A stretch of 62,575 bases of DNA, counting the filler, from Sluysia triapertura (Eukaryota): assembly GCA_046118255.1 (NCBI GenBank). It is 5 parts of 5 records of this genome, joined end to end, with 100 filler letters (N's around TTAATTAATTAA, not from the genome) between each part and the next. Parts side by side here need not be neighbours in the genome. Positions count along the whole stretch, not along the records: positions 1 to 14,278 come from JBJNIA010000455.1; 4 more parts are not named here. One strand, 5' to 3'. A model generated the notes under the pieces. That model saw only the letters and a program-made list of their open reading frames with translations. It was not told where the DNA came from and did no database searches. The translations under genes were made by a program, and so were the position numbers. How positions within the stretch are numbered: position 1 is the stretch's first letter; every line of letters begins with the position of its first letter. Shown here one piece after another: positions 9,753-13,334 of the stretch.

Positions 9753-9998
9753 AATAACTTTAACTAAAAATTTTTAAAAATGTCTTGTCTAAATTTTTTG
9801 TCTATAATTTGATTATAATTGTCTGGATTTTTCTTGTGTCTAACCACAATTTTTCAATTGAGACTAGAATCAAATTTTGTATGTAATTGGTTATCATCAT
9901 ATTAAAGATTCGTCATTAAAGCAATTTCGTCATCATATTACCAAAATTAAAAATGTTATTTTATTAATTGATAAAAAAGTTTATATTAGTGATCTTAG

Positions 9999-10154
9999 TG
10001 TTAGACTTCGTACAGTAGAGTGACCGGAGATCGATCCCGGGATCTCTACCTGCACAGTTCGATGCTATACCACTGAGCTATCAGCTCCGTCTAACAAATT
10101 TATTTTATTATAGTCAATTTTATCAAATGGCACTTTAGGCCTTTTACCCCAACA
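9999..10154 (-). mobile_element. tRNA-bearing TG...CA mini-element (family A), complete copy with TTAG TSD
   Basis: Termini TGTT (9999) and AACA (10154); TTAG at both 9995-9998 and 10155-10158. The minus strand has the leader TGTTGGGGTAAAAGGCCTAAAGTGCCATTT, A box TAGCTCAGTGG and a degenerate B box GGATCGATCTCC. Confidence 0.85.
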
Positions 10155-12101
10155 TTAGTTTTAATATATATCTTAACCATGTAAAGTACTACTATAACAT
10201 TAAACCATTGATATTGACATTCTGTATGCAGTCAAGCCATTGATTAATACACAATTATTAATACATAATATATTAATACATTACAATATATTTATTGATT
10301 TTTTGATATTATTTATTTACTAATTTTATATGGCAAAATTTATTTATTAATTTTATCTGGAAATGATGTATGAATTTATTAATTTTATCTGGAAAATTCT
10401 AAAGTATGTTTTATTAATTACTTTATTAAATTTTTATTTTTAACTTTTAATATTATTATTTTAATCAAACGTGATTATTTTCGAAATATTTTGTTTTAAT
10501 CTGATCTTTCAAGGTCAGATTGTAACTACTATAAAAACAAGTTTAATTTTCATAATTTACACATAATTTTTAAAGAAAAAGATTTCATAATTTGTTTACT
10601 AGTTTTCAATATTTGGTGAAGTTGTTAATTTCAAAAGGACCAATCTATTAACAAAGGAAAAAATCACGATAGATAATTATTATTAAGACAAGATATTATT
10701 ATAATATCGTTTGCAACATTTATACTTAAACTCATTTAATAAATTTGGACCATATAAAGGTCTATAGTAAAATCATTTTTATAACTTTTTAAACTTTATT
10801 ATAACTAGTTCTATCTAGTTATTGTAAAATTTCGACTACATTTCTTTTTAACCTATTTTATATTATTCTGTCATTGTTAATTAATAAATTGTTTATTGTC
10901 TATATTGATTTTTGTAATTTTAATATAAAATATGTAATAATTGAAGAAGCTTTCATACACTAGAATTTAATTCTAGTAGGTAAAATCTTTTAAACTGATC
11001 CAATATAACGGGATTTACGCAAAATCATTATTTTTAAAACCATAAATTAAATATGGCACATGTTTCAAAACAATCCTAGTGCAAAATGTAAAGAAAAACT
11101 AAGCCCAAACATAACATCAAAGTATGAATGTTTACACGATTGGTTGCGATCATTTTGATATGAGTGAATTTATTGTGGATTTTTGTAGTTTTTAATTTGT
11201 GTTGAGTATAAAAGTATAACAATGTGCAAGATGGATTTAATGTAAACTTTTATGAATGTGAGTGGTAATAAGGCTGGGTCACCACAAGTGCAGCATGTGT
11301 TGTTTGTTAAGAGAGAAGATTTATTTGAGGAATTAATATTAATGTTATTTATTATTCAACCATTTGTGATAAGAAAGATATATCCTTTGAGTTGATAATA
11401 TCGAATAATGATGCCAAGACTTTTGCTTCTTGCACGTTTCATCCCCTTTCGTCGGGTTGATCGCTCTTCTGAACCAATGCTATGGAATTTGGAAATCTCA
11501 TCTTAATATAAAAGGGTATGAAAAAAATACGAATTTGTATGTACAAATGTTGCTGATGATGCAATAATTTGCCGTAATATTTGAATATTTGAAATATTAT
11601 TTTATCGCATAACGATTATGTCATTAGGGCTGATGAATGTGTATTATAATTGATTTACGAGTATTTTACTTCTAATTTATTTATTATTCGATAAAATTAT
11701 TTATAATATTTAACTTATTTTCGTGCTAATTATGATGTAGACAAAATAAATGAAATAAAATATTATTTAATTTTTTGAGTTTTGAATTTAAAATTATTAA
11801 AGATTTAATTTAAATTATTTAAAAGATGCAAAATAATTATTAATATTATTATTGTATAATTATCATAAATTACGTGTTGCAAAATCAATAATAAACAGAA
11901 ACAGAATGTAAATAAGAAATATAATAATTAATGAACCAAATCATCACATTATATTTATGGATTATATCGAACAGAATCGATAGTCTCAATGAATAATGGT
12001 ACAAGTATTAAAAAGAAGTAATTAAAAGAAAATTAATGATAAATGACAAGTCTATTCTCAGAATCTATAATTATATATCAGTAGCCATTTCTTGAATAAA
12101 T

Positions 12102-12872
12102 TTATCCAACATTAATAGCAACTTCATTGGCATAAATTCCGTATAATTCCAAATATTGTGCCGAACGAGTATCACTACTCCATTTATTACCGGTAGGAGT
12201 AAAAAAAATGTTGGGTAAGGTATAATAAGGAAAATAAGAACAATCGTCTACCTTATCTAAAACCACAAAATATCCGACATCGTTAGGACAAGAACCATAT
12301 ATATTATTAATATAAAATTTTCTTGAAATTATATTATTACTGTCTCCATTGATACTAAAATAATTAAAAGTTTGTCTTTTCATTTTAGTAATATCATACG
12401 GATAAACAGATACCAAATTATTCAAATTAAACCATGTTAAAATTGTATCATATGAATTAACATTAAAAGTCATATTTACTAATACTTCTCCAGATTCACT
12501 TTTTGCTTCTAATCTAATCATTATCGGTTTCATTGTGTTCCAGATTTGAAATAAATTACTTTTAAAATTGCCATTTTCATCTTTGTACGAAGAAGGAAAA
12601 TAATAAATATTTGTTACACTGACTCCAGAACCAGCAATAATTCGAAGTAATAAATGAATTTTATTCAATACAAATTTCACATAGCCATGTTCGGTTTGCA
12701 ACATGTGATCATTTAGATAATGATAACGACACGTTCGTATGTCATATTCGAAAATGGAACTTTGCTTTAACCTAGCCGAAGCAGCACAATCCATTACTGT
12801 CGGGATTTCGTTATTTTTTGTCATATTTATTAATTGAAAAATATTTAACAAAATAAGAAAGATGTATTTCAT
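12102..12872 (-). CDS. Intronless secreted protein of an uncharacterised invertebrate family
   Basis: Intact 256 aa ORF from ATG to TAA with signal-peptide-like MKYIFLILLNIFQLI. It has a short PAN/apple-like C..FEY...C segment and the motif string WFNLNNL...FNYFSINGD...RKFYINNIYGSCPNDVGYFVV..DC. TATA-like TATATAT lies ~50 nt upstream. Confidence 0.85.
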   Translation of the reverse strand: MKYIFLILLNIFQLINMTKNNEIPTVMDCAASARLKQSSIFEYDIRTCRYHYLNDHMLQTEHGYVKFVLNKIHLLLRIIAGSGVSVTNIYYFPSSYKDENGNFKSNLFQIWNTMKPIMIRLEAKSESGEVLVNMTFNVNSYDTILTWFNLNNLVSVYPYDITKMKRQTFNYFSINGDSNNIISRKFYINNIYGSCPNDVGYFVVLDKVDDCSYFPYYTLPNIFFTPTGNKWSSDTRSAQYLELYGIYANEVAINVG

Positions 12873-13305: not shown

Positions 13306-13334
13306 TGTTGGGATATAGGCCTAAGGTGCCATTT
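13306..13334 (+). mobile_element. Family A 5' terminus only
   Basis: TGTTGGGATATAGGCCTAAGGTGCCATTT matches the 28165 copy at 27 of 29 nt; downstream sequence is unrelated to the tRNA module. Confidence 0.75.

What the first reader, a model, noticed from the sequence alone, without database searches (positions are those of the whole stretch)
9995..10158. tRNA-carrying mini-element with integrase-type ends (TGTT...AACA, 4-bp TSD): not a SINE
Seen: about 7 copies or fragments in 62 kb (9999, 13306, 22643, 28165, 32606, 39663+46507, 46401). Four-bp flanking duplications are perfect twice (TTAG, GAAG) and 3/4 twice (GTTG/ATTG, AGTT/CGTT). A ~65 bp conserved leader sits upstream of the tRNA-like unit, a T4-T5 run follows it inside the element in two copies, and there is no A-tail. 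Known: SINEs start at the Pol III start site, end in a tail and have variable-length TSDs. TG..CA ends with 4-bp TSDs mark Gypsy-type integrases and Ginger transposases (TGTNR ends). Plant Cassandra TRIMs carry 5S rRNA sequence in their LTRs. Inference: this is a tRNA analogue of Cassandra (solo LTR of a Pol III-driven TRIM) or a non-autonomous Ginger-like element carrying a Pol III cassette. I cannot tell from the sequence whether it has been described.
Basis: partly seen in the sequence, partly recalled or inferred. Interest (0 to 1): 0.88.

Follow-up and report, generated by a model that had tools for sequence, protein, structure and literature searches.

The report
Solo LTR of a tRNA-bearing mini-retrotransposon
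The 156-bp unit is a decayed solo long terminal repeat of a 407-bp non-coding LTR retrotransposon whose repeats carry a tRNA-derived RNA polymerase III cassette, a design already described in 2024 as 'Helenus' but apparently not yet reported from a flatworm, which this genome appears to be.

Summary
Window 9999-10154 (tRNA-like unit on the minus strand) is one copy of a high-copy family with sharp TGTT...AACA ends and a 4-bp target-site duplication (TTAG here). The duplication is perfect in 20 of 40 copies, against 2% in mismatched controls and 0 of 40 for 5 bp.

Many copies occur as direct pairs that flank a 93-bp internal domain, which starts with a primer-binding site for the host tRNA-Trp and ends with a purine-rich tract. 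The element is therefore a 407-bp terminal-repeat retrotransposon in miniature (TRIM), and the window copy is a solo LTR. Each LTR has a ~67-bp leader, a tRNA-Ala-derived unit with A and B boxes, a T4 run and a 13-bp tail. The Ginger and SINE readings are rejected.

The architecture is not new. Kojima 2024 (PMC10886601) named such elements Helenus (TRIMp3, with Cassandra and Ajax), and animal Helenus also make 4-bp duplications. This family is absent from that paper's sequence file.

The host looks like a flatworm (mitochondrial AAA=Asn, all genes on one strand), a phylum not on that paper's list. Pol III transcription and the autonomous partner remain untested.

Verdict: new member of a known kind, modest interest.

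The parts
9995..9998 (.). Target-site duplication, left copy (TTAG on the + strand, CTAA on the element's strand)
   Evidence: It is identical to 10155-10158. The 4-bp TSD is perfect in 20/40 family copies against 2.2% in controls.
9999..10154 (-). Solo LTR (156 bp) of a Helenus-type TRIM, with ends TGTT...AACA
   Evidence: It matches 86-91% to the 40 scored copies, out of 4055 first-look candidates. The ends are sharp in the 36-copy alignment. The same unit flanks the internal domain as direct repeats in complete elements.
10088..10154 (-). Leader (U3-like, element positions 1-67). It holds TATAATAAAAT and, at 10089-10096, TGTTAGAC, which is the inverted complement of the LTR's last 8 nt.
   Evidence: The second half of the leader is the part that differs between subfamilies A and B.
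10016..10087 (-). tRNA-Ala-derived unit. The A box TAGCTCAGTGG (10070-10080) is intact; the B-box region (10026-10038) is mutated to GGATCGA.
   Evidence: Less decayed copies are called tRNA by ARAGORN (Ala-cgc, or an 8-nt anticodon loop). They also match Rfam RF00005 at 41-49 bits against a gathering score of 29. The window copy is below threshold.
9999..10015 (-). Tail. The former T4 terminator is decayed here to CTGT and is followed by ACGAAGTCTAACA, a U5-like end that finishes in the integrase-type CA.
   Evidence: A T4 run is present at this place in 43/55 LTRs.
10155..10158 (.). Target-site duplication, right copy (TTAG)
13306..13334 (+). A 29-bp 5' fragment of an LTR of sister subfamily B (TGTTGGGATATAGGCCTAAGGTGCCATTT), truncated; what follows is unrelated.
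   Evidence: many 100% matches to these ~30 nt only; subfamily B copies carry the same internal domain.

Best explanation
Window 9999-10154 is a solo LTR, left when the two LTRs of a 407-bp non-autonomous LTR retrotransposon (a TRIM) recombined after integration.

The complete element reads LTR (156-157 bp), then TT, then a PBS for the host tRNA-Trp, then a 93-bp non-coding internal domain that ends in a purine-rich tract (GGGTGAGATA), then a second LTR, all flanked by a 4-bp TSD. Each LTR consists of a ~67-nt leader, a 72-nt tRNA-Ala-derived unit (G3:U70, A73, A box, B box, broken anticodon arm), a T4 run and a 13-nt tail ending in CA. This is the Helenus/TRIMp3 design.

Shown here: the anatomy, the TSD, the PBS complementarity, the copy number and the age of the copies.

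Inferred: (1) The tRNA-like unit acts as an internal Pol III promoter. A genomic RNA would start at the tRNA-like unit of the 5' LTR, read through that LTR's T4 and stop at the T4 of the 3' LTR. That gives R = tRNA-like unit, U5 = 13-nt tail and U3 = leader. (2) Reverse transcription is primed by tRNA-Trp, and integration is done in trans by the enzymes of an autonomous LTR element. For animal Helenus that element is thought to be Gypsy-type, which fits the 4-bp TSD.

The copies are old and the window copy is dead.
For: Ends and TSD: (20/40 perfect 4-bp TSDs against a 2.2% control, and 0/40 at 5 bp).

Paired LTRs around a uniform 93-bp internal domain. There were 35 internal domains, 1534 first-look candidates, and the 40 scored were 94-100% identical to the query. 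Complete elements with perfect TSDs include L015 CTTT, L058 GAAT, L045 TTAT, L053 AAAG and L044 AAAA.

PBS: a host tRNA-Trp(CCA) gene lies at L097:1450-1521. TGGTGAGCCC is complementary to its 3' end plus CCA and is intact in 24/33 copies. A relative in L093 has 39 nt of exact complementarity.

tRNA origin: ARAGORN and Rfam tRNA at 41-49 bits against a gathering score of 29.

Pol III design: A box in 32/55 LTRs, B box in 29/55 and T4 in 43/55 of these decayed copies. In most complete copies the ~245 nt between the two terminators has no TTTT, whereas only 5% of 245-nt stretches of this AT-rich window lack one.

The same architecture, with a 4-bp TSD in animals, is published (PMC10886601).
Against: There is no RNA evidence: no RNA run holds the element, so Pol III transcription, its start and its stops are untested. 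A TATA-like TATAATAAAAT ~15 nt upstream of the tRNA-like unit could equally serve Pol II.

The model needs read-through of the 5' LTR's own T4.

No autonomous partner was found, so 'Gypsy-type' rests on the TSD length and on the literature.

LTR-LTR identity within elements is only ~90%. All copies seen are therefore old, and A and B boxes are intact in only about half.

Some complete elements lack matching TSDs (10 of 15), as expected from decay or recombination between elements, though this was not shown.

The T4-free body is only a p~0.05-type observation.
Confidence: 0.9

Rival explanations
1. It is a TRIM, but the tRNA-like unit is a passenger: the fossil of a SINE or tRNA insertion into an ancestral LTR. 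The element is transcribed by Pol II from the leader's TATA-like box, as ordinary TRIMs are.
For: TATAATAAAAT lies ~15 nt upstream of the tRNA-like unit. The T4 directly after the tRNA-like unit in the 5' LTR would stop most Pol III transcripts before the PBS. There are no RNA data. Kojima himself states that Pol III use is unproven for Helenus.
Against: Subfamilies A and B differ in the leader but hardly in the tRNA-like unit and tail. The A and B boxes match the consensus in the less decayed copies. The body is free of T4 on the sense strand. The related Cassandra gives Pol III transcripts according to the literature.
Confidence: 0.25
2. It is an ordinary tRNA-derived SINE (SINE2) mobilised by a LINE.
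For: It has a tRNA-like unit with A and B boxes, a high copy number and a short length.
Against: There is a 67-nt conserved leader upstream of the Pol III start. There is no A-tail or simple-repeat tail. The ends are fixed TG...CA. The TSD is strictly 4 bp (20/40, none at 5-6 bp). Direct pairs flank a PBS and PPT.
Confidence: 0.01
3. It is a non-autonomous Ginger-like (or other DDE) DNA transposon carrying a Pol III cassette.
For: It has TGTT...AACA ends and a 4-bp TSD. An internal TGTTAGAC mirrors the last 8 nt.
Against: The terminal inverted repeat is only 4 bp. The units occur as direct repeats around a tRNA-Trp PBS and a PPT, which is the signature of reverse-transcription-based LTR elements. 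No transposase-bearing long copy was seen.
Confidence: 0.02

Closest known systems
Helenus (TRIMp3), Kojima 2024, Biology 13:119 (PMC10886601)
   Same: [quoted passage not shown] It has a PBS complementary to a tRNA 3' end, a PPT, a 4-bp TSD in animals, many solo LTRs, and a tRNA-like unit that is not a functional tRNA. Its size (LTR 157, internal 93, total 407 bp) falls within the published range of 311-1263 bp.
   Different: None of six diagnostic strings of this family occurs in any family of the paper's sequence file. The host appears to be a flatworm, a phylum not among the six animal phyla listed. The PBS is for tRNA-Trp, which the paper reports for only one hymenopteran family. A relative carries a 39-nt copy of the primer tRNA.
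Cassandra (plant TRIM with 5S rRNA sequence in its LTRs)
   Same: Both have a Pol III gene-derived promoter module in each LTR of a non-coding TRIM.
   Different: Cassandra carries 5S rRNA rather than tRNA, occurs in plants, is 565-860 bp long and shares no sequence with this family. The paper does not give Cassandra's TSD length, and I did not check it.
Ajax (nemertean TRIM with a 5S promoter fragment)
   Same: It belongs to the same TRIMp3 concept in an animal.
   Different: Ajax has a 5S-derived module, a 5-bp TSD and a tRNA-Leu PBS.
ta-TRIM of taeniid tapeworms (Koziol et al. 2015, PMC4558846)
   Same: It is a TRIM family in a parasitic flatworm.
   Different: As far as I know (only the abstract was seen), ta-TRIM has no small-RNA module in its LTRs. 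No sequence comparison was made here.
tRNA-derived SINEs (SINE2)
   Same: They have a tRNA-derived internal Pol III promoter, are short and are abundant. Kojima proposes that a SINE2 inserted into an LTR gave rise to Helenus.
   Different: SINEs start at the Pol III start site, end in a tail, have variable TSDs and depend on LINEs. None of this applies here.

Membership tests
Helenus / TRIMp3 | Two direct LTRs flank a short non-coding internal domain (a TRIM of roughly 1.3 kb or less) | tested here: met
   LTR 156-157 bp, internal domain 93 bp, second LTR, 407 bp in all. This is seen in L015, L044, L045, L051, L053, L054, L058 and others.
Helenus / TRIMp3 | tRNA-derived sequence with A and B boxes inside the LTR | tested here: met
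   ARAGORN calls about half of the copies. Rfam tRNA scores 41-49 bits against a gathering score of 29 in five copies. TAGCTCAGTGG and GGTTCGATCC are visible in the alignment. The window copy itself is decayed.
Helenus / TRIMp3 | PBS complementary to a host tRNA, directly downstream of the 5' LTR | tested here: met
   TGGTGAGCCC, 2 nt after the LTR, is complementary to the 3' end plus CCA of the host tRNA-Trp gene at L097:1450-1521. It is intact in 24/33 copies. A relative in L093 matches 39/39 nt.
Helenus / TRIMp3 | Polypurine tract directly upstream of the 3' LTR | tested here: met
   GGGTGAGATA abuts the 3' LTR and is nearly invariant in 35 copies. It is short and only 8/10 purine.
Helenus / TRIMp3 | Fixed-length TSD (4 bp in animal families) | tested here: met
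   20/40 copies have a perfect 4-bp TSD, against a 2.2% control and 0/40 at 5 or 6 bp.
Helenus / TRIMp3 | Transcription from the Pol III promoter | not testable with these tools
   No RNA run holds the element. The only support is by sequence: the boxes, the T4 run and the T4-free body. The founding paper also leaves this unproven for Helenus.
Helenus / TRIMp3 | Mobilisation by an autonomous LTR retrotransposon (Gypsy in animals) | tested here: inconclusive
   19 sites keep an intact 15-nt tRNA-Trp PBS, and 15 of them follow the same CTAACATT junction.
SINE2 (tRNA SINE) | Starts at the Pol III start site, has a 3' tail and has variable-length TSDs | tested here: not met
   There is a 67-nt conserved leader, no tail, and a strict 4-bp TSD.
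Ginger DNA transposons | Long terminal inverted repeats and a DDE transposase in autonomous copies | tested here: not met
   The terminal inverted repeat is only 4 bp. The copies are direct repeats around a PBS and PPT.

The most novel reading that the evidence does not exclude
This may be the first Helenus-type (TRIMp3) family in Platyhelminthes, a seventh animal phylum, present in thousands of copies and shared with at least two other sequenced organisms.

Its internal domain begins with a 39-nt reverse-transcribed copy of the primer tRNA-Trp that stops exactly next to G37. That would record plus-strand synthesis reading past position 58 of the primer up to the next blocking modification.

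If the tRNA-like units of intact copies still bind TFIIIC, thousands of dispersed Pol III sites would shape this parasite's chromatin.
Probability: 0.55. Interest if true: 0.4.

Novelty: new member of a known kind. Interest (0 to 1): 0.3.

Why it matters
The finding settles what this abundant repeat is. It warns annotators that thousands of 'tRNA genes' or 'SINEs' in this genome are in fact LTRs. It extends the known host range of Pol III-type TRIMs, probably to flatworms. It gives a clean example of tRNA-Trp priming with an extended primer copy. It does not reveal a new kind of mobile element, because the architecture, the name and the 4-bp TSD rule were published in 2024.

Tried and rejected
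- ARAGORN and Rfam found nothing on the window copy, because it is too decayed.
- Three pattern searches for a tRNA matching the PBS failed. I had wrongly assumed a perfectly paired acceptor stem or a GG before the T-loop. only hit a pogo-like DDE transposase gene. A looser pattern then found the tRNA-Trp gene.
- Pfam and the 5.8-billion-protein search found nothing for the two window ORFs. The Atlas gave only weak PAN-domain look-alikes from molluscs and cnidarians, so the host was typed from its mitochondrion instead.
- Only DNA runs hold the element, and organism names are coded, so there is no expression test and no species name.
- The internal domain as a whole folds no better than shuffles (z = -0.65). 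Only a local 7-bp hairpin (ATGTTTG/CAAACAT) is predicted.
- The autonomous partner could not be examined.
The tool ignores terminal N and showed nothing extra, and I did not repeat it. One search used fully specified letters and gave only places.
- I built no consensus of the element. All statements rest on real copies.

Full report
**What is in the window**

Positions 9999-10154 hold a 156-bp unit that begins TGTT and ends AACA, between two copies of TTAG (9995-9998 and 10155-10158). Read on the minus strand it has three parts:
- a 67-nt leader;
- a 72-nt tRNA-like unit, with an intact A box (TAGCTCAGTGG) and a mutated B box (GGATCGA instead of GGTTCGA);
- a 17-nt tail ending GTCTAACA.

ARAGORN and Rfam do not call this copy. 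The window is very AT-rich, about 25% G+C.

**The family**

The assembly (G000) has 619 Mb in 263,945 contigs. It gave 4055 first-look candidates for the unit, and the 40 scored were 86-91% identical to the window copy.
- In an alignment of 36 copies with flanks, similarity starts exactly at TGTTGGGG and stops exactly at GTCTAACA.
- Among 40 copies with both ends, the 4 bp on either side are identical in 20 and agree at 3 of 4 positions in 8.
- Mismatched pairs of flanks agree 2.2% of the time. Registers of 5 and 6 bp give 0 of 40.
- There is no A-tail.
- The duplicated tetramers are AT-rich and show no clear consensus.

**It is an LTR, and the complete element is a TRIM**

Five of the first 30 loci carried two direct copies 93 bp apart. 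A search with that spacer gave 1534 first-look candidates. The 40 scored were 94-100% identical to the query, and most were flanked by the unit on both sides.

The spacer is nearly invariant in length and sequence in 35 copies. It starts with TT and then TGGTGAGCCC, and it ends with GGGTGAGATA directly against the next TGTTGGG. Complete elements are 403-407 bp. Several keep perfect 4-bp duplications around the whole element: L015 CTTT, L058 GAAT, L045 TTAT, L053 AAAG and L044 AAAA.

This is the anatomy of a terminal-repeat retrotransposon in miniature. The window copy, with its own TSD, is a solo LTR left by LTR-LTR recombination.

The two LTRs of one element are on average 90% identical (range 84-94%). 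That is the same as the identity between unrelated solo LTRs, 91%. The copies therefore stem from an old burst, and none seen looks recent.

**The tRNA-like unit**

- In less decayed copies ARAGORN finds a cloverleaf in about half of the loci. It reports either tRNA-Ala(cgc) or an 8-nt anticodon loop.
- The Rfam tRNA model matches end to end at 41-49 bits, against a gathering score of 29.
- The acceptor stem pairs perfectly with G3:U70 and A73. From general knowledge these are the alanine identity marks.
- The anticodon arm does not pair, so this is not a working tRNA.
- Among 55 decayed LTRs, 32 keep the A box, 29 keep the B box, and 43 keep a T4 run right after the unit.
- Subfamily B has a different second half of the leader but practically the same tRNA-like unit, tail and internal domain. 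The 29-bp fragment at window 13306-13334 is of this B type.

**The primer**

My first searches for a matching tRNA failed because of wrong assumptions. A looser pattern found a genuine tRNA-Trp(CCA) gene in an AT-rich contig, at L097:1450-1521 (67.8 bits in Rfam).

Its 3' end plus CCA is complementary to TGGTGAGCCC. This 10-nt stretch is intact in 24 of 33 copies, and 11 nt are intact in 2.

A degenerate relative in L093 carries 39 nt exactly complementary to tRNA-Trp from its CCA end back to position 38, stopping next to G37. The main family has the same 39 nt with three small deletions totalling 7 nt. The first third of the internal domain is thus a copy of the primer itself.

My inference rests on what is known of retroviral plus-strand strong-stop synthesis and of m1G37 in animal tRNA-Trp. 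Synthesis appears once to have read past position 58 of the primer, up to the next blocking base. This was not tested.

Nineteen genomic sites keep the intact 15-nt PBS, against 0 in the control, and 15 of them follow the same CTAACATT junction. The autonomous partner therefore remains unknown.

**How it probably works**

The mechanism is inferred. The tRNA-like unit would serve as an internal Pol III promoter.
- RNA would start at the unit in the 5' LTR and pass its weak T4.
- It would then run through the PBS, the internal domain and the leader of the 3' LTR, and end at that LTR's T4.
- This gives R = tRNA-like unit, U5 = 13-nt tail and U3 = leader.
- tRNA-Trp primes reverse transcription. 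A partner's integrase joins the TG...CA ends and makes the 4-bp duplication.

In support, the sense strand between the two terminators has no TTTT in most complete copies, while only 5% of 245-nt stretches of this window lack one.

Against it, there are no RNA data: only DNA runs hold the element. A TATA-like box in the leader could also serve Pol II.

**What is known**

Kojima (2024, PMC10886601) described exactly this design as Helenus, and grouped it with Cassandra and Ajax as TRIMp3.
- These are TRIMs with a tRNA-derived sequence in the LTRs, a PBS and a PPT.
- Animal families make 4-bp TSDs and fungal and plant families make 5-bp TSDs.
- Animal families are probably Gypsy-dependent.
- The tRNA-like unit is not a functional tRNA.

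[quoted passage not shown] Its sequence file does not contain this family: of six diagnostic strings, four are absent and the other two occur once each, in unrelated families. Its PBS figure lists tRNA-Trp for one wasp family only. Later papers in the library only cite it, and I found no flatworm report.

**The host**

- The only invertebrate-type mitochondrial contig (C243991) is 14.9 kb and 22.5% G+C, and every long ORF lies on one strand. Nearly all predicted tRNAs do too; the two on the other strand are weak calls. It has trnW-cox1-trnT.
- In an alignment of its cox1 with a vertebrate cox1, AAA codons pair with Asn six times and never with Lys. ATA pairs with Ile or Val, and TGA pairs with Trp. 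This is the echinoderm/flatworm code.
- Two AT-rich nuclear-like contigs carry decayed copies of this mitochondrial DNA, at 88% and 81% identity. This ties the mitochondrion to the main genome.
- The host is therefore most likely a flatworm, probably a neodermatan. I put this at about 0.85.
- The assembly also holds three different vertebrate-type mitochondrial contigs (46% G+C, with the WANCY tRNA cluster, ~80% identical to one another) and a vertebrate-type tRNA-Trp 3'-end match (C118396; ARAGORN calls no tRNA there). These look like fish DNA in the sample.
- Two further runs, labelled as other organisms, hold related copies that include the internal domain.

**Verdict**

The Ginger and SINE readings are rejected. 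The architecture is already described, so this is a new family of a known kind, probably in a new phylum. Interest is modest.

Noticed in passing
G000 C219470, C200653, C192378 (L077-L079); C118396 (L090): Three different vertebrate-type mitochondrial contigs are in the assembly. They have the order ND2-W-A-N-C-Y-COX1-S-D-COX2-K, 46% G+C, and are ~80% identical to one another. There is also a match to the vertebrate-type tRNA-Trp 3' end at C118396, although ARAGORN calls no tRNA there. Together these look like DNA of several fish species mixed into the assembly, either host tissue or contamination.
   Followed up: partly
G000 C243991 (L080+L083), 14,925 bp: This is a near-complete AT-rich mitochondrial genome (22.5% G+C). 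Every long ORF and nearly all predicted tRNAs lie on one strand; the two tRNA calls on the other strand are weak. The codon reading is AAA=Asn, ATA=Ile and TGA=Trp, which points to a flatworm host.
   Followed up: partly
G000 C37458 (L081:5834-7137) and C90747 (L082): These AT-rich contigs carry nuclear copies of the flatworm-type mitochondrial cox1 region (88% and 81% identity, with in-frame stops).
   Followed up: partly
L093 (G000 C178197), minus strand ~1525-1487: A degenerate relative of the element has a PBS region exactly complementary to 39 nt of the host tRNA-Trp (positions 38-76 with CCA), ending next to G37. The main family keeps the same stretch with three small deletions. The same locus also holds a non-LTR reverse-transcriptase fragment (FLAYADDL).
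   Followed up: partly
window 10089-10096 and 9999-10006 (all copies): TGTTAGAC directly before the tRNA-like unit is the exact inverted complement of the LTR's last 8 nt, GTCTAACA, so the tRNA-like module is bracketed by an 8-bp inverted repeat. It could be a relic of an older, shorter LTR or of the insertion that brought in the tRNA-like unit. This remains unexplained.
   Followed up: no
G000, 37 sites: The intact-PBS junctions lie 31 on the forward and 6 on the reverse strand of their contigs, and many sit 50-90 nt from a contig start. This suggests that the assembler broke repeatedly inside the LTR of one multi-copy, possibly longer, element.
   Followed up: no
L073, L075 (G000 C101003, C213922): These loci hold copies of a pogo/Tigger-like DDE transposase gene. 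In L075 a solo LTR of the Helenus family is inserted just upstream, with TSD TTAT.
   Followed up: no
window 12102-12872 (minus strand): This is a 256-aa ORF with a signal-peptide-like start. It has no Pfam family and no homologue in the large protein search. There is only a weak feature-level resemblance to PAN/Apple-domain clusters from molluscs and cnidarians.
   Followed up: partly
L015:1380-2030 in runs X2 and X3: Two runs labelled as other organisms contain contigs that cover the internal domain and parts of the LTR, with ~9-12 differences per ~100-135 nt. The family is therefore shared beyond the source sample, either with relatives or through cross-contamination.
   Followed up: partly
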